Virus record (IMG/VR): IMGVR_UViG_3300042010_000106
Span: 62,001 to 126,000 of that record
DNA: 64,000 bases
Direction: 5' to 3' (one strand)
Part shown: one piece after another, positions 8,706 through 64,000 of the stretch
Layout of the letters: every line of letters starts with the position of its first letter
Position numbering within the stretch: the stretch's first letter is position 1
Position numbers and translations under genes: made by a program
Notes under the pieces: generated by a model
Told to the model about the DNA's origin: nothing
The model's input: the letters and a program-made list of their open reading frames with translations, nothing else
Databases searched by the model: none

Positions 8706-10709
8706 ATGAAAAACTTTTCTGTTTTCGGTAAAGCAGTTCACAGCGCCTACGCCACCATTCTGCAAAACGACGCAGGCCGTAAGGATTCCGTTTTCGTGGT
8801 GGACATTACCGGCGACGAATTGTGGGCGCACTATCTCGCATCTTTCCCGGAAGGCACCAACCCGATTTTCCGCACGCGCACTGAATACGATTGTTCGTGC
8901 TGCCGCAACTTCATCAAAAACATCGGCGCGGTTGTCAGTATCAAAGACGGCAAGTTGCAATCGGTTTGGGATATCGAAATCGACGACGAACTTTTCCAGA
9001 CCATCGCCGATTCCATGTCGAAGCTCGTAAAGTCGCTGAACATTGCTGCACCTTTCATGGTGAGCGAACCGGCGTACGGCGCTGAAGTGACCCACCACAA
9101 AGACGAAACGTGGCACCACTTCCACGCAAAAGTGCCAACCATTTTCATGTGGAAGCACAACGAAAGCAATTACATTGGCGAGCGCAAAAACGACTTCGAA
9201 GGTTTGAAGCGTTCGATCAAAGAAATCGACAACGATGCAATTGAACAAGTGGCCGATTTGATCGACCAAGATTCGCTGCACAAAGGCCCGGAATACAAAG
9301 GCAAAGTTGACCTGCTGCGTAAGCTGAAAGCGGCGTACGAGAAACTGAAAACCAAACGCGCACGTGAACTGTTTCTGTGGGCGAACGCCAAGCCGGGTAC
9401 GCGTATTCACAGCACCGTTATCGGTACGCTGTTGGTTGATCTTTCGACCGGTGAAGACCTCGAAATCGCCGTGAAGAAATTCGAAGACAAAGTGAGCGGC
9501 ACCAACTTCAAACGTTCGAAAGCGCTGGTCACTCAAAAGATGATCGACGAAGCGCAAAAGCTCGTTGAAAAGTTGGGCATCGAAGATTCGCTCGCACGTC
9601 GTTTTGCAGTGCGCGAAGATATCAGCGTTAACGACGTTCTGTTCGTTGATGGTTCGGTGAAAAAGAAACTGCTGGGCGGTGCGTTCGACTCGATCAAACC
9701 AACCAAGAAAAACGTTCCTGTTCTGACGGACTTGATCGAAGATATCAGCATCAAAGATTTCCTGAGCAAAGTTCTGCCGAAAGCGGATACGGTCGAAGTG
9801 TTTGTGCAGAATGAACATCAACCAACTTTCGTTTCGCTGATTGCCCCGGTGAATGCCGATTCGAAACCGCTGTTCAAATGGGATAACGGTTTTTCGTGGG
9901 CGTACACTGGTGACGCTACTGAATCCATCCGTGAGCGTGTGAAGAAAGCAGGCGGCAAAGTTGACGGCGATATTCGTATTTCGCTGTCGTGGCACAACGC
10001 AACCGACCTCGATCTGAGCCTGCACAAAAACGGCGCGCACATTTACTACCACAACCGTAATGAGTTCGGCGCTACGCTCGACCTCGACATGAACGGTATC
10101 GACAAGAAAGATTCCGTTGCACCGGTAGAAAACATTGTGTGGCCGCGTCTGGCAAATGCACAACCGGGTACGTACTCGATTGTTGTGCACAACTATGCCA
10201 CACGTGCGACCGCCAACGTCGGCTTTGAAGTTGAAGTCGAAGTGATGGGCAAGCTGTACAGCTACGAAAATGCGAAAGGTTTGCGCGACAACGAGAAAGT
10301 GAAAATCGGCGAAGTAATTATCGCGAAAGGTGGCGAAGTTACTGTCGTTGGTTTGACCGAAGGTGGAGCGTCCAATGAGAAATGGGGCGTGCACACCGAG
10401 ACTTGGACGCCGGTTGATTTGATCACCCGTTCGCCAAACTTCTGGAACGATCAGAAGATCGGTCACGAACACATTTTCTTCATGCTGAAAAATTGCGTAC
10501 GTGATGATAGCGCACGCGGTTTCTACAACGAATACCTGCGTGATGATTTGAATACGCATCGCAAAGTGTTCGAAGTAGTTGGTGCGCAAATGCGTGTGGC
10601 TCCGAACGACCAGCAACTGAGCGGCCTTGGTTTCTCGATCACCAAGCGTGACGAAATCAAAGTGCGCGTGAAGGGTGCGACTAACCGCGTTCTGAACGTG
10701 AAGTTTTAA
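8706..10709 (+). CDS. large conserved phage protein with N-terminal CSCC motif and C-terminal YfaP/DUF2135-like domain
   Basis: YDCSCCRNF; DIRISLSWHNATDLDL...IYY...LDLDMN...VENIVW...GTYSIVVHNY. Confidence 0.75.
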   Translation: MKNFSVFGKAVHSAYATILQNDAGRKDSVFVVDITGDELWAHYLASFPEGTNPIFRTRTEYDCSCCRNFIKNIGAVVSIKDGKLQSVWDIEIDDELFQTIADSMSKLVKSLNIAAPFMVSEPAYGAEVTHHKDETWHHFHAKVPTIFMWKHNESNYIGERKNDFEGLKRSIKEIDNDAIEQVADLIDQDSLHKGPEYKGKVDLLRKLKAAYEKLKTKRARELFLWANAKPGTRIHSTVIGTLLVDLSTGEDLEIAVKKFEDKVSGTNFKRSKALVTQKMIDEAQKLVEKLGIEDSLARRFAVREDISVNDVLFVDGSVKKKLLGGAFDSIKPTKKNVPVLTDLIEDISIKDFLSKVLPKADTVEVFVQNEHQPTFVSLIAPVNADSKPLFKWDNGFSWAYTGDATESIRERVKKAGGKVDGDIRISLSWHNATDLDLSLHKNGAHIYYHNRNEFGATLDLDMNGIDKKDSVAPVENIVWPRLANAQPGTYSIVVHNYATRATANVGFEVEVEVMGKLYSYENAKGLRDNEKVKIGEVIIAKGGEVTVVGLTEGGASNEKWGVHTETWTPVDLITRSPNFWNDQKIGHEHIFFMLKNCVRDDSARGFYNEYLRDDLNTHRKVFEVVGAQMRVAPNDQQLSGLGFSITKRDEIKVRVKGATNRVLNVKF

Positions 10710-56867: not shown

Positions 56868-57686
56868 ATGACTTACAAAAGCCGCACCAGAGGTAACGCT
56901 GTTTTGCTGGATAGCGAAGTGCTGGAAGCGAGCAGGAAAGCAACCGGCATTGATCCAATGATCGCCATCCGCGAAAAGTATCCAGACGCAGAACTTGTTT
57001 TCTCCACGCGTGAACAAATCGACCGCGTGCGTGCACCGTTCAACCCATACGAACACCTTGCAGATTTTCGCCGGGGTTTTCATGACGAAATGACGTTTGA
57101 TTATTCGGCTGCTGAAGAGCGTATGCACGCCCTGTTGCCAATTGTTGTAGGCCACGACAACCTGCCGTACATTTTTGAAGGCGAAGTCGCACGCATGCGG
57201 GCAATGAAAGACATGCCACGCTTTGTTCCGCGTCTTTATCCGCATCAAGAAGAAGCGCTGCGTCATGTTCAAACGTTGCCATATGTTGTTATGGAACTCG
57301 ATAGCTGCAAACCGCTCGACCTCGGCATTGGCATTCACGGTGATGTGGCTTTCGACATCGAAGCGCACACTCTGAAAAACTTTCGACCGTTGATTACGAA
57401 TCCGCGTGGCATAAAAATCATGAAGGATAACTATTCTGAAATGATGCGCTCGCATATGGTCATTGACGAAGCGCATGTGTGGGATAGAAACCCTGTACGT
57501 TCTGCGCTGGCTTGGGGCCTCGACATTCGTTACAAGTTTGCACGGGAAGACGGCAAAACCCACGCGCAGATTTGCAAGCAAGAATTGAAGTCGATCAAGA
57601 AGCGCCGTAAGGCAGCAATGAAACAGTTGGATGCGTGCGGTGCCCGGTACGAAGAAGCTCTGAAGGAAAACGAAAATGTACGGTGA
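56868..57686 (+). CDS. hypothetical protein with relic SF2-helicase motifs
   Basis: LYPHQEEAL and MVIDEAH without an intervening Walker A. Confidence 0.5.
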   Translation: MTYKSRTRGNAVLLDSEVLEASRKATGIDPMIAIREKYPDAELVFSTREQIDRVRAPFNPYEHLADFRRGFHDEMTFDYSAAEERMHALLPIVVGHDNLPYIFEGEVARMRAMKDMPRFVPRLYPHQEEALRHVQTLPYVVMELDSCKPLDLGIGIHGDVAFDIEAHTLKNFRPLITNPRGIKIMKDNYSEMMRSHMVIDEAHVWDRNPVRSALAWGLDIRYKFAREDGKTHAQICKQELKSIKKRRKAAMKQLDACGARYEEALKENENVR

Positions 57687-58263
57687 AGACGAACCAAAGG
57701 TTCCACAAAACTATAAATATTTCGGCTACTATGGCGCACCGTTTTACTGGTTCGTTGCTGCGTGCCTTGCTCTAGCGATTTTCTGCATCGCGCAGGAACG
57801 CGTCAGTTTTTACGAAACGGTTAATACCAAGGCTGTTCGTGATGCAACCATCGTTGACGCATGGCCTTATAACACGGGCAAATACGGAACCGGTCGTGAG
57901 CAGTGGGAAGGCACGTTTCGCGATAATGAAACGGGAAAGTTTTACACGTATGAAATGAGCGGCGGTTTGTACCAAAAATTCCTGCGTGAAAAGAGCGGCC
58001 ATGGCATTCAGGTACAGGTCAACATGCTAGCTTCGCGTGCCGGTGTTCCTGAAGCAGAAGGCATGGAAAACTACAAAGTCTTTTTCGATTTGGTGCGAAT
58101 CTTTTTCGCAATCATTACCTGCGTTATCGCCATGATTTGTTTAGTCAGTCTGCACACGTCGTATTCGTACGTCACTGCACGTGATGCAGAAGAAGCACAG
58201 CGGCAGAAATTGAAAGACGAAGAAGATGCCCGTCACAGACGGCGTATGGCAGCGCGGGAGTAA
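57676..58263 (+). CDS. 2-TM membrane protein with periplasmic beta domain
   Basis: two hydrophobic helices. Confidence 0.7.
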   Translation: MYGEDEPKVPQNYKYFGYYGAPFYWFVAACLALAIFCIAQERVSFYETVNTKAVRDATIVDAWPYNTGKYGTGREQWEGTFRDNETGKFYTYEMSGGLYQKFLREKSGHGIQVQVNMLASRAGVPEAEGMENYKVFFDLVRIFFAIITCVIAMICLVSLHTSYSYVTARDAEEAQRQKLKDEEDARHRRRMAARE

Positions 58264-58534
58264 CAGCCATGGCGAACTGTAAATGGTACGTATGCCGTCT
58301 TGCTGGCGGCGAATACATTCACTCACTTGACGAAACACATACAAAGGTAATGTCGTGCAAAAGCAGAATCCGGGCGCAGCAGTTCACACTTCCCGAAGCC
58401 GAGAAAATCAAAGCAAAGATAGCGTGCGAAATCATACCCGCACATTGGGAACGAATCCCATAGTTCCAAACGCTGCGCAGTCAAAAGAACTCGACCGCCT
58501 TTTTGGCATGTGGGACAAGCTATAAGGATTACAT

Positions 58535-58942
58535 ATGAATATTATTATGGATTACGACGACAATCTCGCACGTCGTATTGCAAGCTACGCAGTAAAGAAC
58601 AAGAAAACGTTTGAAGAAGTCGTGTTTGAAACACTGGATAAAGCGCTGCCCGTAGAGCGTACGGTTTGTGTGGCGCTTAAACCGATGACCGACACTGACC
58701 GCGATGAAATGTTTCGCGTCAATTGGGCGTTGAACATTAATCGTTTGTACGAAGCTGTGCAGCGTTTGGAAGTCGGGCAAAAATGTTCCTTCGACTATCT
58801 GCTTACGCCAGAACAACAACGTATGACGAACCGCAAAAAAGCGGCGTGGCGGCGTGCCCTGTATCGCTGGTCAATGGGTAACGAGAATTACACCGTAACA
58901 CTGCTGGTTGATGGCGGTACTACGGTTAAACGCAACAGCTAA
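58535..58942 (+). CDS. ribbon-helix-helix protein with C-terminal domain
   Basis: MNIIMDYDDNLARRIASYAVKNKKTFEEVVFETL. Confidence 0.55.
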   Translation: MNIIMDYDDNLARRIASYAVKNKKTFEEVVFETLDKALPVERTVCVALKPMTDTDRDEMFRVNWALNINRLYEAVQRLEVGQKCSFDYLLTPEQQRMTNRKKAAWRRALYRWSMGNENYTVTLLVDGGTTVKRNS

Positions 58943-58956
58943 AAGGAACTGTAAAC

Positions 58957-59253
58957 ATGAAAGAATGGCACGAAGTATTTTCCGCAGCGTTTTCCGCAGC
59001 GATCAAATTCACGATTGCATTGCAGCCGAAGAACGCGCCGACCGTTGAAATCGTTGACGACCCACACGCCGTGCAAGTGGAGTGGGAAACCGACAAATTC
59101 ACCGCGTCTTTCTGGTTCTACGAAAATCGCACGTACGAATATCGCATTGTTTTTCATCCTGAAGGTTTTCAAATTCAGTTGCCAGACCTTGAAGGCGAAG
59201 ACGTTAGCGTTGACGCACCTATCAACGAAGAATTTATCCGTCTGTTGAGGTAG
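58957..59253 (+). CDS. hypothetical protein
   Basis: AAGGA RBS. Confidence 0.6.
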   Translation: MKEWHEVFSAAFSAAIKFTIALQPKNAPTVEIVDDPHAVQVEWETDKFTASFWFYENRTYEYRIVFHPEGFQIQLPDLEGEDVSVDAPINEEFIRLLR

Positions 59254-59491
59254 TCATGAACGAAACAGGTTTTCCAAAAGGTTCCGCGCTCGACAACGCT
59301 TTGTGGCCGCTGAAATATGCGACCACTAAAAAGACGTTGGTAGATTTCACGCCGCAGGTAATCGAAAACGCTTCAAAACTGCTGGCTGATTTCGACGCGG
59401 CGTTCCCTGCAATAAAAGCGCTGGCGGATCTTGACCGTGAACAGCGCCACAAAGTTTCCCCTCAACTGCAACAAATTCCCCGGAGCAAATA

Positions 59492-59728
59492 ATGAAATAT
59501 CTCGTAGTTTCTATCGACGGTAAAGAAGCGTCTATGATCATCGGCAAAGGCATCGACGTTGACAAGATCGTTGATGCACTCGGCGCCAAAGTGGTCAGCG
59601 GTGGCGATGCAGTTGTTCACCAAATGTTCATCACGTGCCAAGGGACAATAACTGTAAAGGGTAACGAGGTTGGTAGCCGTGGCATGAAAGACGAAGTGCT
59701 GCTGCGCCACGCGGATTTCATCGAGTAA
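59492..59728 (+). CDS. hypothetical protein, weak paralog of 21208 N-domain
   Basis: MKYLVV...VVSGG...CQG...SRG.KD..LL. Confidence 0.55.
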   Translation: MKYLVVSIDGKEASMIIGKGIDVDKIVDALGAKVVSGGDAVVHQMFITCQGTITVKGNEVGSRGMKDEVLLRHADFIE

Positions 59729-59741
59729 AAGGTTTCATAAA

Positions 59742-60107
59742 ATGCTTACACGCAGACAGCAACAGCAGCGCAAACAAGCGAGAGAAAAAGAGGCGGCAGA
59801 AATCGCACGCTTGTCCAAGCAGCTAGGCCGCAATCCTGATGGGAAAGCCGTACGAAAAAAGGCAAAGGACAATGATTTATCTGTCGCTTACCGTTCGGAC
59901 GTGTCACCGTACAAAAGTCTCGCTGGCACAGTGTTAGACAAACCCGATACATTCGCGTTCGAAGTTGATGATTTCGAAATGCGCGAGAAGTTGGCTCAAG
60001 TGGAAATCGAACGTAAGAAAAAACGTATTGCGCCGCTCTACAACAAAGGCGGCTTGCAGTACATTACTGACGATATGGACTTAACGACATTAGGACGCAA
60101 GGTATGA
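59742..60107 (+). CDS. basic conserved phage protein (APxYNKGxxQYI motif)
   Basis: RKKKRIAPLYNKGGLQYITD. Confidence 0.7.
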   Translation: MLTRRQQQQRKQAREKEAAEIARLSKQLGRNPDGKAVRKKAKDNDLSVAYRSDVSPYKSLAGTVLDKPDTFAFEVDDFEMREKLAQVEIERKKKRIAPLYNKGGLQYITDDMDLTTLGRKV

Positions 60108-60709
60108 CGGATTCATTTACACACAGCACAATGCACCAAGTCGGTATGCAGATGATGCCTGTTTCAGAAGTTCGCAAGCTTTTAGAAAGTCGGTGCGAAA
60201 GGCTGACGGTCGATGACATTGCGAAAAAGCGTGTTGCCAATCGCATCATGCAGGCCCGCAAACGTTGCAAATTAACGTGGGATGTTTTGCAGAAGCATTT
60301 CGACGGTGTGCAATATCAGCGCGATTACGATTTGCGCACGTACGCCCGCAGCATTCAGCATTCGATTCTGAACGACAAAGGCCGCTGGTTGCCGAAATAT
60401 ATTTTCCGCGACCGCCCTGCACATTTGTTCTGGATTGAAGGCACCAGCCAAGCAGTTTTGTACAACTTCATTCCGCGCACCGATGCGAATGTGTACCTTG
60501 TAGCGGATACCAGTTTGATCGTTAACTACGACATTCTGTGCAACAAATTGCTGTTCGTGAAAGACATGCCTAATCGTTGTCGTTTCATCTGCGAGAACAC
60601 GGTCGTTTATCCGTGTGACATCGTACAAACCAACGATGCCGCGATTGCAGAACACAACGCCGAAAAAATTGCACACTTCGCCAAGTACAAGGAATTTACC
60701 AATGACTGA
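60104..60709 (+). CDS. hypothetical protein
   Basis: ATGA overlap. Confidence 0.7.
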   Translation: MTDSFTHSTMHQVGMQMMPVSEVRKLLESRCERLTVDDIAKKRVANRIMQARKRCKLTWDVLQKHFDGVQYQRDYDLRTYARSIQHSILNDKGRWLPKYIFRDRPAHLFWIEGTSQAVLYNFIPRTDANVYLVADTSLIVNYDILCNKLLFVKDMPNRCRFICENTVVYPCDIVQTNDAAIAEHNAEKIAHFAKYKEFTND

Positions 60710-61556
60710 TCAAGCCACCCGTGACGCCGACCGTGAATTGGATTTGGCGCTGGACGCAGAACTTCGCGCAGACACACAGGCAAGGAACCGCAAAGCTTTT
60801 ATCGAACAAATTGATCGTTCTATTCCTCCTGTATCTGAAGAGGCAAGGAACAATTTAATTGCCGATTACGACGATATAAATCGCACGTGGCAAGGTGATC
60901 GCATTCAACGCGACCCGGCTGATTTGAAAGACATGGGGCGCGATGGTGTCGTGGGCCGTCTCGGCGACTATTCGCGCATTGATGACCCGGAACACCGCGC
61001 CAAGCTCGACGCTGCTTTTGAGAAGCTGCAAACGTCCCTTGAGAATGGCCGCTCAAACGCCGCTGCTGAAGAGCGGGCAAAGAAACGCATGGAAGCCCGC
61101 CAAGCGTTCACACAACGCCTCAAAACGCGTGTACGGGCCTTCCTGTTCGCCGTGTGGTCGCTGGCGTTCCTGTGCATCGTCGGTGCCGGGGTGTGGGGCT
61201 ACTACAACTTCAAAACGATTGTGCCAGCGTGGGACAAATACACGTCGGCGCAAAAGAACTGCATTTTCAAAGTGGGTGAACGAACCGTCACCGGAACGCG
61301 CACCGTTTCGTATCGCTATTATCAGATTCTGAACTGGCGTGCACACGATGAAAGCACGGTTGAAACTGAAACACGTTTGGACATCAACGGTAACGGTATG
61401 ACGGTTATTCAGTACGTCGATGGCAAGGCTGAAAAGCTGGCAATTTCGGACGGTGAAAAATATCGTCCGTTGCTCAAGCCTGCTGAAAAGTATTCGTTCT
61501 TTATGGACAACGGCAAAAACTTTGCAGAGCTGTCGTTCAACGACATTTGCCGGTGA
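60702..61556 (+). CDS. single-TM membrane protein
   Basis: AAGGA RBS; central TM AFLFAVWSLAFLCIVGAGVWGY. Confidence 0.7.
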   Translation: MTDQATRDADRELDLALDAELRADTQARNRKAFIEQIDRSIPPVSEEARNNLIADYDDINRTWQGDRIQRDPADLKDMGRDGVVGRLGDYSRIDDPEHRAKLDAAFEKLQTSLENGRSNAAAEERAKKRMEARQAFTQRLKTRVRAFLFAVWSLAFLCIVGAGVWGYYNFKTIVPAWDKYTSAQKNCIFKVGERTVTGTRTVSYRYYQILNWRAHDESTVETETRLDINGNGMTVIQYVDGKAEKLAISDGEKYRPLLKPAEKYSFFMDNGKNFAELSFNDICR

Positions 61557-61806
61557 AATCCACACCGGGAACAAACTGGTGCCCTCAACAGCATGACCTT
61601 TCGACGGGCGGAATTACCACTGTCGATTGGTATGCTAGGCAACGCAAATTAAAACTGTCGCTTATTCTCGATTTGTTGAACGGTGTTAAATTTAATGGCT
61701 TGGGTATTGTTATAAACCATTACAAAGGTGGCAGGGTTCCATACGAAGCCAGCACCGTTCTAACAGTCGAAGAAATGCGAAAGTTGAATTCGTTCAGGAA
61801 ACGTAA

Positions 61807-62190
61807 ATGAAATGGAAGCACGGCTCTACCAGAAGTGTTTTGCTGATTGGTAAGTACGCGATCAAGTTTCCCATGATTAAGCACTGGCGGAATTTCCTGC
61901 AAGGTATTTTGTGCAATGACACAGAATATTCGTTCAGCCATTTGGATACGCCGCTGCTGGCTCCTGTGCTGTGGCGTTCGTGGGGATGTATCGTTATCGT
62001 CATGCCGCGTGCTGACGTGAAAAGCTACGACGCCGAAGATCGTTTCGCATATGTTGAAGAATTCTGGAAGCTTGTTGAACAAGTCGAAGGACTCAACAAA
62101 GACACGATCAAAAAGATTGTGGAAAACAAAGTGTGTTCCATTGGCATGATTAACGGCAAGCCTGTCGCCATCGACTACGGGATTATCTAA
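61807..62190 (+). CDS. minimal protein-kinase-like phage protein
   Basis: GSTRSV...YAIKFP, N-x-x-E, terminal G..NGKPVAIDYG. Confidence 0.6.
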   Translation: MKWKHGSTRSVLLIGKYAIKFPMIKHWRNFLQGILCNDTEYSFSHLDTPLLAPVLWRSWGCIVIVMPRADVKSYDAEDRFAYVEEFWKLVEQVEGLNKDTIKKIVENKVCSIGMINGKPVAIDYGII

Positions 62191-62838
62191 ATGAATCGTC
62201 CAACTCCTTACCGCCCACGTGTGCCGGATGACCTGTTTGAAGAGCTGAAAAAATTCAGCGACGGCACATTCAAAGGTTTGCATGAACTGACGCTGCGCTA
62301 CATTCGCGAAGGCATTGAAAAAGATCGCGCTGTGCAGGCTGGCAAAGAACGTAAAGTTCCCGGCAACGGGTATTTCCCATTCAGTGATGTCACGATCAAC
62401 AATTGGGCAAAGTATTACGGCATCGACGTGATGGAAGTTGCAGCCGCTTACCACGCAATGGAACATATCGCGCTCGATAGCGTTGATCGTGTGAACGGTG
62501 AATTCAGTCTGGACGGCCACGACATCAAAGGTTTGAACAAATTCTTTTTCGGCGACAATTGGGAAAAAGACATGCTGTTGCGCCAACTGGCTGCAATCGA
62601 CGCTGCTGCAAATCACGTTGTAGGTGCAGCGACAGAAGAGCGACCGGAAGAAAGATCAGATATTACCGTGGCGATTCTTGCGGAACGTTTGTCTGTTCGT
62701 GCTGCTGAAATCATCAAGTTCATGTTCAAGCGCGGCACACCGGCCACCATGCACCAATTGCTGAGTGATGCAGAAGTCGAACTCGTTACCAACGCAATGC
62801 AGGTCGTTCCAAAACTCGCCAAACGGACAAAGAAATGA
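62191..62838 (+). CDS. RHH DNA-binding protein fused to translation initiation factor IF2 N-terminal domain
   Basis: N-term [15 protein letters not shown]...[10 protein letters not shown]; C-term [34 protein letters not shown] matches pseudomonad InfB [34 protein letters not shown] (recalled). Confidence 0.75.
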   Translation: [215 protein letters not shown]

Positions 62839-63263
62839 AACCAGTTAAACAAGCCTTGTACAACAGCCGCACCGCTGACAAATTCGTTGTTCGTTTGCCG
62901 GACGGCTGGCGTGAAAAGATTGAAGCTTTTGCGCGTGTAAATCACCGTAGCATGAACAGTCATTTGCTGACCTATATCGAAGCGTGCCTGAAGTTGGAAG
63001 AGGCGGAAAACTTCGGTTTGTTGGAAGCGTTGCTGTCTGATGAACCGGGCGGCGCAATCGTGGTTGCACAAGGCCCACGCGTTCCGTACGCAATCAATAT
63101 TCCGGTAATGTTTGAAGGCCACGTTTGGCTGGTGGTAAAACTCAACGTTGAAGACGGCGCTGTGTGGGCGGATTTGGAGCGTACCGATTCGGAATTCGAA
63201 TACGATAACGGACGCCGTTGTATCACTTGCCTGCATAAACATTTGGAGCCGTTCGGTGCGTGA
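62835..63263 (+). CDS. amrZ: AmrZ/AlgZ-like Arc-family regulator with non-homologous C-terminal domain
   Basis: [42 protein letters not shown] vs AmrZ [42 protein letters not shown] (recalled). Confidence 0.85.
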   Translation: [142 protein letters not shown]

Positions 63264-63264
63264 C

Positions 63265-63579
63265 ATGGCGCTGTATGTTATTTGTCCCGGCACCGTGACC
63301 AGTCGCACGGACGGGCAAGAACATTTCGTAGACGAACGTTCGTTGATTTCGTTGTACGGTGTTCACCCTGCACTGTGCGTTGTGTATCCGCGCACAGAAG
63401 CAAATGAACGTGGCTGGCGAAAGCCGCCGCATGCAATGTATTTAGAGCCGCAATACAGCGGTGATTATTCCCTACCAATTTACTACGGGCCAAAATTCCA
63501 ATGGAAACTCAAGTCGCATATACCGGTACTTGCCGCCAAACTGCTTTCGGCATCAACGTTCCTGAGTTTGTTCCAGTAG
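63265..63579 (+). CDS. conserved phage hypothetical protein
   Basis: YVICPG.V.SRTDGQEHFV...LYGV...LEPQYSGDY. Confidence 0.65.
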   Translation: MALYVICPGTVTSRTDGQEHFVDERSLISLYGVHPALCVVYPRTEANERGWRKPPHAMYLEPQYSGDYSLPIYYGPKFQWKLKSHIPVLAAKLLSASTFLSLFQ

Positions 63580-64000
63580 CAGCCGCTCGCGTTTCGATGG
63601 ACGTAATCAATCTGCCGCATAACTGCGTGCCGTTGAAATACGAAGCCGGTAAAGATTTCTGCAAGGTTCTGCCCGAAGAAAGCATCGACACTTTGTGCTT
63701 TGTTTTCAAACTGGCTGGCGATTATCAGGACATCAACCTTGACGCCATTCGCGATTACATTGCGACTGTGGAAATCGACCACAACAAGTTTCACGTTTCG
63801 GAACGGGCGCTGCTGAACGAAGAAACGAAAATGATTCGGACTTTGTACGTTCGTTTCTACCGCAACGAAGATTTCAAATGCAAAGAACACCCGGAAATGC
63901 TGTTGGGTACGCCGTCCGGTATGTACCACTGCCCGTACTGCTGTGAAATGCAGTTGGCCGGTACTACGCACCTCGATCCAATGTTTGAAGCTGTTGTGGA
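63501..64000 (+). CDS. hypothetical protein with GMYHCPxC motif, truncated at window end
   Basis: my translation METQVAY...GMYHCPYCCEMQLAGTTH, open to the end of the window. Confidence 0.6.
   Translation, partial: METQVAYTGTCRQTAFGINVPEFVPVAAARVSMDVINLPHNCVPLKYEAGKDFCKVLPEESIDTLCFVFKLAGDYQDINLDAIRDYIATVEIDHNKFHVSERALLNEETKMIRTLYVRFYRNEDFKCKEHPEMLLGTPSGMYHCPYCCEMQLAGTTHLDPMFEAVV

What the first reader, a model, noticed from the sequence alone, without database searches (positions are those of the whole stretch)
62191..62838. RHH protein carrying a captured translation initiation factor IF2 N-terminal domain
Seen: C-terminal segment (about 62659-62806) [42 protein letters not shown] on a protein whose N-terminus looks like an RHH; it is ATGA-coupled to the AmrZ-like gene. 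Known (recalled): the segment closely matches the IF2_N module just before the G-domain of Pseudomonas InfB. Inference: a DNA-binding/IF2-fragment chimera could tether ribosomes or IF2 partners, compete with IF2, or act as a decoy for a defence protein that targets or monitors IF2. I do not know of a described precedent.
Basis: partly seen in the sequence, partly recalled or inferred. Interest (0 to 1): 0.8.

Follow-up and report, generated by a model that had tools for sequence, protein, structure and literature searches.

The report
Phage regulator carrying stolen IF2 ribosome anchor
A soil Pseudomonas jumbo phage encodes a small, probably DNA-binding protein whose tail is a copy of the piece of the host's translation initiation factor IF2 that anchors IF2 to the small ribosomal subunit, so the phage may use it to dock on or compete for ribosomes; this has not been tested.

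Summary
ORF 62191-62838 (+, 215 aa) is a real, conserved phage gene. Residues 156-204 hit Pfam IF2_N above its gathering score (36.3 vs 25.3 bits). An exhaustive scan of 1.84 billion proteins found, outside the phage family, only Pseudomonas-type IF2. The source is IF2's N2 sub-domain, not N1. It is 62-64% identical over 42 residues to fluorescens/putida-group IF2, 48% to P. aeruginosa and about 38% to E. coli. Published cryo-EM shows N2 docks on 16S rRNA helix h16 at the 30S shoulder. The model superposes on that structure (7UIU) at 0.9 A, and the contact motif Ser-Val-Lys is kept as Ser-Val-Arg. The module is an accessory: 6 of 11 family clusters have it, one lineage deleted it, and two copies have drifted. 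It is still under purifying selection (dN/dS 0.22-0.43). The rest of the protein is an RHH-like N-terminus (weak support) and a central winged-helix domain. The gene overlaps (ATGA) a gene whose N-terminus strongly matches Pseudomonas AmrZ. Descent from host IF2 is well supported. Function is inferred: most likely 30S/h16 docking. Its use as one more nucleic-acid-binding winged helix is a serious rival. I found no described precedent.

The parts
62191..62838 (+). Whole gene, 215 aa: RHH-like module, central winged helix, linker, IF2-N2-derived module, basic tail
   Evidence: ORF. 11 homologous clusters, conserved synteny.
62191..62355 (+). Residues 1-55: RHH-like N-terminal module (short extended segment, then helices 13-22 and 27-53). 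The most conserved part of the protein.
   Evidence: AF2 topology. hhalign to the AmrZ-like alignment in the RHH register, P 0.0037. dN/dS 0.02-0.11. No Pfam RHH hit.
62356..62595 (+). Residues 56-135: central domain present in all 11 family members. Predicted winged-helix fold of the IF2_N / MerR / RacA type. No sequence-level relation to IF2.
   Evidence: AF2 model with pLDDT 84.6. Foldseek AFDB top hits are IF2 N-terminal domain proteins, TM 0.45-0.52, E 0.06-0.7. PDB hits 4b3x, RacA, pSK1 Par, MerR family. hhalign against the C-terminal module E 0.26. No Pfam hit.
62596..62655 (+). Residues 136-155: variable acidic linker, predicted disordered
   Evidence: pLDDT below 50 at residues 142-155. 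15-62% identity among homologues, with length variation.
62656..62802 (+). [quoted passage not shown]
   Evidence: Pfam IF2_N 36.3 bits. PDB 7uiu_x residues 265-314. Foldseek 7UIU rmsd 0.9 A over 46 residues, 48% identity. VIA Z 6.7 to 4b3x residues 1-54. The 80 best genome loci are all Pseudomonas infB at 62-64% identity. Exhaustive scan.
62692..62700 (+). Ser168-Val169-Arg170, aligned to Ser277-Val278-Lys279 of P. aeruginosa IF2, the main contact with 16S rRNA h16
   Evidence: Alignment. Contact residues from PMC9192638. Kept in P0001-P0004, changed in P0005 and P0006.
62701..62730 (+). 30-nt stretch (codons for [10 protein letters not shown]) identical to infB of 13 of 81 sampled Pseudomonas species. 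Logan contigs break here.
62803..62835 (+). Residues 205-215: basic tail ending in K-R-T-K-K, kept even in the relative that deleted the module
62835..63263 (+). Downstream gene that overlaps by ATGA, 142 aa: AmrZ-like RHH N-terminus plus a conserved C-terminal domain. Always the next gene in relatives.
   Evidence: Pfam Arc 53.7 bits. AmrZ 3QOQ E 8.6e-14. Synteny. Alignment A2.
61807..62190 (+). Upstream gene, 127 aa, phrog_4301 (function unknown). Its stop codon directly abuts the ATG of the gene. Present upstream in most relatives, though not in L004, L006 or L009.

Best explanation
This is a genuine gene of a roughly 312-kb soil/rhizosphere jumbo phage that most probably infects fluorescens/putida-group Pseudomonas. 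The protein has a conserved core: an RHH-like N-terminus and a central winged helix, probably a dimeric DNA-binding regulator made together with an AmrZ-like partner. In one sub-lineage a flexible linker attaches a module of about 50 residues to this core. The module was copied from the host's infB gene and is the N2 sub-domain of IF2. [quoted passage not shown] I propose that the phage copy still binds h16, so the protein docks on 30S subunits. If the RHH dimerises, the protein would carry two anchors. The consequence would be one of two things: competition with IF2 for its anchoring site, which would damp or bias initiation, or tethering of small subunits to the DNA or transcripts that the core binds, which is the logic of RfaH. 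Shown: the gene is real, the module descends from Pseudomonas IF2 N2, its fold and the Ser-Val-Lys/Arg contact motif are kept, it is under purifying selection, and it is an accessory within the family. Inferred: h16/30S binding, dimerisation, DNA binding by the core, and every downstream effect. The confidence given is for the 30S-docking function. Confidence in descent from IF2 N2 is about 0.9.
For: Pfam IF2_N is above its gathering score. The PDB profile search hits IF2 N2 and not N1. The exhaustive phmmer scan of 1.84 billion representatives finds, outside the family, only Pseudomonas-type IF2, plus one spurious ankyrin repeat. All 80 best genome loci are Pseudomonas infB at 62-64% identity, and host N2 is identical across more than 60 species. 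The model superposes on 7UIU ('N2 sub-domain of IF2 bound to the 30S subunit') at 0.9 A over 46 residues and on Thermus IF2 residues 1-54 at Z 6.7. N2 anchors IF2 on h16 through S277, V278, K279 and R259 (PMC9192638). It does so in 30S pre-initiation complexes and, as that preprint's introduction cites from earlier work, independently of GTP and IF1 (bioRxiv 10.64898/2026.06.26.734871). The phage keeps S-V-R at the aligned positions in 4 of 6 long forms. Around that motif it has Arg where the host has Gln and Leu (read directly from the sequences). dN/dS of the module is 0.22-0.43, and bootstraps rarely reach 1. The disordered linker suits a tethered docking module. Phage proteins that bind host ribosomes exist, for example PhiKZ014 on 5S rRNA (PMC10914614).
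Against: There is no binding data of any kind. The R259 equivalent is not clearly kept. The module is absent from 5 of 11 family clusters and was deleted in frame in P0009. In P0005 (19.6 bits, S-L-H) and P0006 (no Pfam hit, K-T-S) it has drifted away from IF2, so h16 binding cannot be universal in the family. Helix 3 is already diverged: about 3 of 12 residues are identical to the host. At the amino-acid level the module changes about ten times faster than the RHH part. The fold is shared with DNA-binding winged helices such as RacA, pSK1 Par, GlnR and MerR. A global competitor of IF2 would also hurt the phage's own translation.
Confidence: 0.4

Rival explanations
1. The IF2-derived module has been re-used as one more nucleic-acid-binding winged helix. 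It would extend or strengthen DNA (or mRNA) binding by the RHH and central winged-helix core and would have nothing to do with ribosomes.
For: After IF2, the next structural neighbours are DNA-bound MerR-class domains: pSK1 Par, RacA, GlnR/TnrA, CadR, BldC. The central domain of the same protein has the same fold class. A basic tail follows the module. The drift of P0005 and P0006 away from IF2 fits a generic binding role.
Against: In the window's copy and three others, helix 1-2 and the h16 contact motif stay close to IF2: 15 of 16 residues identical to the host over the stretch A171-T186. A module taken from IF2 was already shaped for an RNA minor groove, and plenty of phage winged helices were available if only DNA binding were needed.
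Confidence: 0.3
2. The module mimics IF2 towards a protein partner rather than rRNA. Candidates are uS4 or another neighbour of h16, NusA or RNA polymerase, or a host or rival factor that recognises IF2. This includes the reader's decoy idea.
For: The homologous N1 sub-domain of IF2 binds NusA KH2-AR1 (PMC12297416). N2 docks near uS4.
Against: The module matches N2 and not N1 (N1 scores -2.7 bits). No protein partner of N2 is reported in the papers read. No defence system that monitors IF2 turned up.
Confidence: 0.1
3. The module is a captured passenger with little or no present function, on its way to being lost.
For: It is missing in 5 of 11 clusters, one in-frame deletion keeps the rest of the gene, Pfam scores fall from 36 bits to nothing across the relatives, and the gene is a recombination mosaic.
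Against: dN/dS is 0.22-0.43 with 95% bootstrap upper bounds of pN/pS below 1 in all five pairs tested. The reading frame is intact in six divergent lineages with dS near 1. The hydrophobic core and the fold are kept.
Confidence: 0.12
4. It is an artefact: an assembly chimera between phage DNA and host infB, joined through a shared 31-mer.
For: Logan contigs of two runs end at 62701/62730, where 30 nt are identical to host infB, and host infB contigs are present in the same samples.
Against: On both sides of the 30-mer the sequence continues in frame as a diverged IF2-like module, not as host infB. The two flanking contigs (51.6 kb and 26.5 kb) have the same depth. Five other homologues carry the module without the exact 31-mer.
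Confidence: 0.01

Closest known systems
N2 sub-domain (N/G1 domain) of bacterial IF2, as in P. aeruginosa IF2 residues 266-312 (PDB 7UIU/7UNV) and T. thermophilus IF2 residues 1-54 (4B3X)
   Same: Homologous in sequence: 48% to P. aeruginosa and 62-64% to fluorescens/putida-group IF2. Same fold (rmsd 0.9 A). The Ser-Val-Lys contact motif is kept as Ser-Val-Arg. A flexible segment precedes it.
   Different: It is not part of an IF2: there is no G domain, domain II, C1 or C2. It sits at the C-terminus of a small phage protein behind an RHH-like module and a winged helix. Helix 3 and the R259 position have diverged. It evolves fast, whereas the host copy is invariant across more than 60 species.
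PhiKZ014 (gp014) of Pseudomonas jumbo phage PhiKZ, an early ribosome-binding protein
   Same: It is a jumbo-phage protein of Pseudomonas that binds host ribosomes through rRNA. This is the kind of function proposed here.
   Different: It binds 5S rRNA on the 50S central protuberance. It is not derived from a host translation factor and has no DNA-binding module. Ribosome binding is shown for PhiKZ014 and only inferred here. Sequence relatedness was not tested.
RfaH/NusG-type bridging of transcription to the 30S subunit
   Same: It is a possible working analogy: a DNA-recognising factor that also holds a 30S subunit.
   Different: RfaH binds uS10 through its KOW domain and rides on RNA polymerase. 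Here the contact would be h16 through an IF2 module, and no link to RNA polymerase is known. This is analogy only.
MerR / excisionase-like winged-helix DNA-binding domains (RacA, pSK1 Par, GlnR/TnrA)
   Same: Same fold class as both the central domain and the C-terminal module.
   Different: There is no sequence similarity. The C-terminal module is a specific sequence homologue of IF2.
AmrZ (Arc-family RHH regulator of Pseudomonas, PDB 3QOQ)
   Same: The overlapping downstream gene has an AmrZ-like RHH domain. The N-terminus of the gene studied aligns weakly to it in the RHH register.
   Different: The gene studied has no significant RHH family hit. The downstream protein has a different C-terminal domain from AmrZ.

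Membership tests
IF2_N (PF04760) / IF2 N2 sub-domain | Match to the family HMM above the curated threshold | tested here: met
   36.3 bits against a gathering score of 25.3, residues 156-204. P0002-P0004 score 27-32 bits, P0005 scores 19.6 (below threshold), P0006 has no hit.
IF2_N (PF04760) / IF2 N2 sub-domain | Compact strand-helix-helix-strand-helix fold that superposes on solved N2/N-G1 domains | tested here: met
   AF2 elements E155-159, H160-167, H171-180, E190-192, H193-202 with pLDDT about 85. 7UIU rmsd 0.9 A over 46 residues. 4b3x Z 6.7.
IF2_N (PF04760) / IF2 N2 sub-domain | Nearest sequence relatives outside its own family are bona fide IF2, at the N2 position rather than N1 | tested here: met
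   Exhaustive scan. Genome scan: 80 of 80 best loci are Pseudomonas infB. N1 scores -2.7 bits.
IF2_N (PF04760) / IF2 N2 sub-domain | Residues that contact 16S rRNA h16 (S277, V278, K279, R259 in P. aeruginosa) | tested here: inconclusive
   S-V-K is kept as S-V-R in P0001-P0004. It is S-L-H in P0005 and K-T-S in P0006. The R259 equivalent cannot be aligned with confidence.
IF2_N (PF04760) / IF2 N2 sub-domain | Binds h16 / the 30S shoulder | not testable with these tools
   This needs co-sedimentation, RNA binding or cryo-EM.
Translation initiation factor IF2 (whole protein) | GTPase domain, domain II and the C1/C2 tRNA-binding domains | tested here: not met
   The protein is 215 aa. The only IF2 similarity is in residues 156-205 (21 bits against a cutoff of 424 for TIGR00487). 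It is not an IF2.
Ribbon-helix-helix (Arc/MetJ/CopG) DNA-binding proteins, for residues 1-55 | Significant match to an RHH family model | tested here: not met
   No Pfam hit at E up to 5, on the whole protein or on residues 1-60. None in PDB or NCBIfam.
Ribbon-helix-helix (Arc/MetJ/CopG) DNA-binding proteins, for residues 1-55 | Strand-helix-helix pattern in register with a known RHH | tested here: inconclusive
   hhalign to the AmrZ-like alignment puts residues 7-45 on 17-55, P 0.0037, probability 9%. AF2 shows an extended segment and then two helices. Atlas leads are RHH_5 and RHH_1/UPF0175, at low scores.
Ribbon-helix-helix (Arc/MetJ/CopG) DNA-binding proteins, for residues 1-55 | Dimer with an antiparallel two-stranded sheet that binds operator DNA | not testable with these tools
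   No multimer prediction or binding assay is available. No operator was found.
MerR/excisionase-like winged helix, for the central domain 56-135 | Fold match to solved or predicted members | tested here: inconclusive
   TM 0.40-0.52, Foldseek E 0.06-3, probabilities up to 1.0 for IF2 N-terminal domain models. No sequence signal.
Phage ribosome-targeting proteins (PhiKZ014 type) | Sequence or fold homology to PhiKZ014 | not tested
   It is cited as a functional analogue only. PHROGs gave no significant family for the gene.

The most novel reading that the evidence does not exclude
A sequence-specific DNA-binding dimer that carries two copies of the host IF2's own 30S anchor. It would either park small ribosomal subunits on phage DNA or nascent transcripts, or clamp the h16 site so that IF2 cannot anchor. 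That would be the first case of a phage stealing a ribosome-docking sub-domain of an initiation factor, and a new route for viral control of bacterial translation initiation.
Probability: 0.3. Interest if true: 0.8.

Novelty: new variant of a known kind. Interest (0 to 1): 0.62.

Why it matters
Phages are known to carry whole translation genes and to make ribosome-binding proteins. I did not find a described case of a phage protein built around a single docking sub-domain lifted from an initiation factor. If the module still binds h16, it is a natural, minimal, portable 30S-shoulder binder. That would make a tool for probing what the IF2 N2 anchor contributes to initiation, a way to test whether tethering ribosomes to DNA-bound factors matters in infection, and a lead on how non-nucleus-forming Pseudomonas jumbo phages take over translation. 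The neighbouring AmrZ look-alike suggests this small operon is a place where host regulatory modules are collected.

Tried and rejected
Phage databases. Megablast of 60000-64000 against GenBank phages gave no match. tblastn of the protein gave one hit, 'Pseudomonas phage Y6'. That record turned out to hold host nusA-infB DNA, so the hit is really IF2. PHROGs gave nothing significant for the gene, for its C-terminal module alone, or for IF2 N1 or N2.

RHH support. There was no Pfam, NCBIfam or PDB sequence hit for residues 1-60, and no RHH among the structural matches.

Widening the family. A profile search with A1 and a search restricted to residues 1-56 returned only the same family.

Is the central domain a second IF2 capture? 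hhalign against the C-terminal module gave E 0.26 and Pfam found nothing. I rejected this at sequence level and kept only a fold-class resemblance.

Other checks. There are no paralogues of any of the three modules elsewhere in the window. The promoter/terminator scan found fewer sites than shuffled sequence, and no operator was identified. Ten neighbouring ORFs have no Pfam domain. The window has no tRNA.

Recent DNA transfer. Overall codon identity to host infB is not above expectation (13 of 27 against 10.7 expected, P about 0.22). Only one 30-nt patch stands out.

Assembly chimera. Rejected.

Spurious hit. The 1473-aa ankyrin-repeat protein P0012 was dismissed.

Full report
**1. The gene**

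Its ATG directly follows the TAA of a 127-aa upstream gene. Its TGA overlaps the ATG of the next gene as ATGA at 62835-62838. The window has about 49% G+C, with all genes in this stretch on one strand. The protein's own record comes from a 312,325-bp contig. A 667-aa protein elsewhere in the window is closest, at 55-57% identity, to Pseudomonas putida phages pf16, Lu11 and HRDY3. The same DNA is found in rhizosphere and soil metagenomes from several studies. So this is a soil jumbo phage, probably of Pseudomonas. It has no close relative among deposited phage genomes.

**2. The IF2 similarity is real and specific**

- Pfam IF2_N matches residues 156-204 at E 4.7e-9 and 36.3 bits, above the gathering score of 25.3.
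- A profile of the family against all PDB sequences finds P. aeruginosa IF2 residues 265-314 (E 1.9e-6), then E. coli IF2 residues 304-368 (E 0.0065). The N-terminal (N1) copy of the same fold in these proteins scores below zero.
- An exhaustive phmmer scan of 1.84 billion representative proteins with residues 150-215 returned eleven hits. These were the protein itself, one spurious ankyrin-repeat protein, and nine IF2 proteins or fragments. Those of the Pseudomonas type, carrying K-F-M-F-K, rank on top.
- A scan of 185,579 species genomes kept 80 best loci. All are Pseudomonas or Phytopseudomonas infB, 62-64% identical over 42 residues. This scan is seeded by short patterns from the query, so it is biased towards such matches, but it agrees with the unbiased scan.
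- The host sub-domain is identical in more than 60 of these species. Identity falls to 48% for P. aeruginosa. I count about 38% for E. coli from the residues printed.
- The only 'phage' hit by tblastn, Pseudomonas phage Y6, is an unverified record that contains host nusA and infB.

**3. Which part of IF2 it is**

The AF2 model of the module (strand 155-159, helices 160-167 and 171-180, strand 190-192, helix 193-202, pLDDT about 85) superposes on PDB 7UIU at 0.9 A over 46 residues. 7UIU is titled 'N2 sub-domain of IF2 bound to the 30S subunit'. The model also superposes on Thermus IF2 residues 1-54 at Z 6.7, the top hit of a Foldseek-independent search.

According to Basu et al. 2022 (PMC9192638), residues 266-312 of P. 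aeruginosa IF2 form this sub-domain. It complements helix h16 of 16S rRNA at the 30S shoulder. Ser277, Val278, Lys279 and Arg259 form the main interface, and the preceding segment wraps the minor groove. A 2026 preprint (10.64898/2026.06.26.734871) resolves the same docking in E. coli 30S pre-initiation complexes, near uS4. [quoted passage not shown]

In the alignment, the phage's Ser168-Val169-Arg170 fall on Ser277-Val278-Lys279. The stretch from Ala171 to Thr186 is identical to the fluorescens-type host at 15 of 16 positions. Helix 3 has diverged, and I cannot place an equivalent of Arg259 with confidence.

**4. The rest of the protein**

Residues 1-55 are the most conserved part: 91-98% identity among long forms, dN/dS 0.02-0.11. 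AF2 gives an extended segment followed by two helices. Profile-profile alignment to the AmrZ-like neighbours puts residues 7-45 on their RHH in the right register, but only at P 0.0037. No RHH family model matches, so RHH is likely but not established.

Residues 56-135, modelled alone at pLDDT 84.6, resemble IF2 N-terminal domains and MerR/RacA/Par winged helices at fold level: TM 0.40-0.52, E values not significant. There is no sequence signal. I read this as a winged helix of the same broad class, not a second capture.

Residues 136-155 are a variable, disordered, acidic linker. Residues 205-215 are a basic tail.

**5. Family and history**

Single-sequence and profile searches of 5.8 billion proteins find only 11 clusters. 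Six have the module and five do not. The gene is always followed, with a 4-nt overlap, by an Arc/AmrZ-like gene.

- Long forms go with a 142-aa type of that neighbour. Three short forms go with a type of about 210 aa that carries a 70-residue insertion.
- The 157-aa form P0009 has a neighbour that is sister to the window's. It keeps the start of the linker and the basic tail, so it lost the module by an internal in-frame deletion.
- The short form P0007 is 99% identical to the long form P0005 in the central domain but differs on either side. The gene is therefore a recombination mosaic.
- Without an outgroup I cannot say whether the short forms are ancestral. Since the module comes from a cellular gene, a capture in the phage lineage is the natural reading.
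- Pfam scores fall from 36.3 (this window) through 32, 31 and 27 to 19.6, and to no hit in P0006.
- dN/dS of the module is 0.22-0.43, and at most 1.9% of bootstraps reach 1. The module is therefore maintained by selection, although its amino acids change about ten times faster than those of the RHH part. Its host counterpart is frozen.

**6. A DNA-level trace**

Overall, codons for shared residues are not more alike than codon usage predicts: 13 of 27 against 10.7 expected, P about 0.22. However, the ten codons at 62701-62730 are identical to infB of 13 of 81 species and differ by one base in 49 more. Under the phage's own codon usage this has a probability of about 4e-4 to 7e-4.

Logan contigs of two runs end exactly at this 30-mer. 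Host infB contigs from the same soil samples align to 62701-62750. This supports co-occurrence with such hosts and explains the assembly breaks.

It is not a chimera. Both flanks continue in frame as a diverged module, the flanking contigs have equal depth, and the other homologues lack the exact 31-mer. Whether the patch is a remnant of the capture, a short conversion tract or chance is open.

**7. What it most likely does**

The captured piece is the part of IF2 that anchors it on the small subunit by itself. The phage copy keeps its fold, its core and three of the four named contact residues. Around them it has extra arginines where the host has Gln and Leu.

The best-supported mechanism is that the module docks on h16 and brings the (probably dimeric) DNA-binding core to 30S subunits. 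The effect would be either competition with IF2's anchor or a tether between ribosomes and the DNA or transcripts bound by the core. I put this at about 0.4.

The main rival, at about 0.3, is that the module now serves as one more winged-helix nucleic-acid binder. This fits its fold class, the similar central domain, the basic tail and the drift in P0005 and P0006. Mimicry towards a protein partner (0.1), a decaying passenger (0.12) and an artefact (0.01) are less likely. None of these was tested functionally.

**8. Comparison with what is known**

The protein is not an IF2, because it has no G domain. It is a homologue of one IF2 sub-domain placed in a new architecture. Ribosome-binding phage proteins are known, for example PhiKZ014 on 5S rRNA (PMC10914614). 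From my own knowledge, huge phages also carry whole translation factors.

I found no phage family (PHROGs) and no paper that describes a captured IF2 sub-domain. I class it as a new variant of a known kind: host-derived modules in phage takeover proteins.

The overlapping downstream gene has a strong AmrZ-like RHH (E 8.6e-14 to 3QOQ), and host amrZ-like contigs align to it at DNA level. So two adjacent genes carry Pseudomonas-like regulatory modules.

Noticed in passing
window 62835-63263 (+): The overlapping downstream gene has an N-terminal RHH about 65% identical to P. aeruginosa AmrZ (3QOQ, E 8.6e-14), followed by a conserved C-terminal domain of unknown fold. Host amrZ-like contigs from the same metagenomes align to 62864-62906 at 85% or more. 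It looks like a phage AmrZ mimic.
   Followed up: partly
window 62701-62730: This 30-nt stretch is an exact match to infB of 13 of 81 Pseudomonas species. It is unlikely under phage codon usage (about 5e-4), while the rest of the module shows no excess codon identity. Logan contigs break exactly here.
   Followed up: yes
L001 (OQ572408.1, 'Pseudomonas phage Y6', 8834-14971): This unverified 42.6-kb 'phage' record contains complete host nusA and infB genes. It is host or transduced DNA rather than a phage gene set, and it can produce false 'phage' hits for IF2-like queries.
   Followed up: partly
window 62356-62595 (residues 56-135): The central domain, present in all family members, is predicted with good confidence to have the same fold class as IF2 N-terminal domains and MerR/RacA winged helices, although it has no sequence similarity to them.
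   Followed up: yes
L006 5414-6049, L009 1737-2366, L093 564-1199: In phages with the short form of the gene, the AmrZ-like neighbour carries a helical insertion of about 70 residues between its RHH and its C-terminal domain. Accessory modules seem to move between the two genes of the pair.
   Followed up: no
L008 910-1383 (P0009); L092 1339-1755 (P0007) against L091 1334-1960 (P0005): P0009 lost the IF2-like module by an in-frame internal deletion and kept the linker start and the basic tail. P0007 is 99% identical to the long form P0005 in the central domain only, which shows recombination inside the gene.
   Followed up: yes
window 62191-62355: Synonymous divergence among relatives is lower in the first 55 codons (dS 0.23-0.49) than in the rest of the gene (0.5-1.4). 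This could reflect recombination or a constraint on the DNA or RNA itself.
   Followed up: no
window 57676-63579: Ten neighbouring small genes, all on the + strand and tightly packed or overlapping, have no Pfam domain. The 127-aa gene upstream belongs to phrog_4301 (function unknown). The whole window has no tRNA gene.
   Followed up: partly
window 8706-10709 (+): This 667-aa protein of phrog_1735 (function unknown) is conserved in more than 500 phage records, from Pseudomonas pf16/Lu11 (55-57%) to Klebsiella, Salmonella and Bacillus phages. One record calls it a putative RNA polymerase.
   Followed up: no
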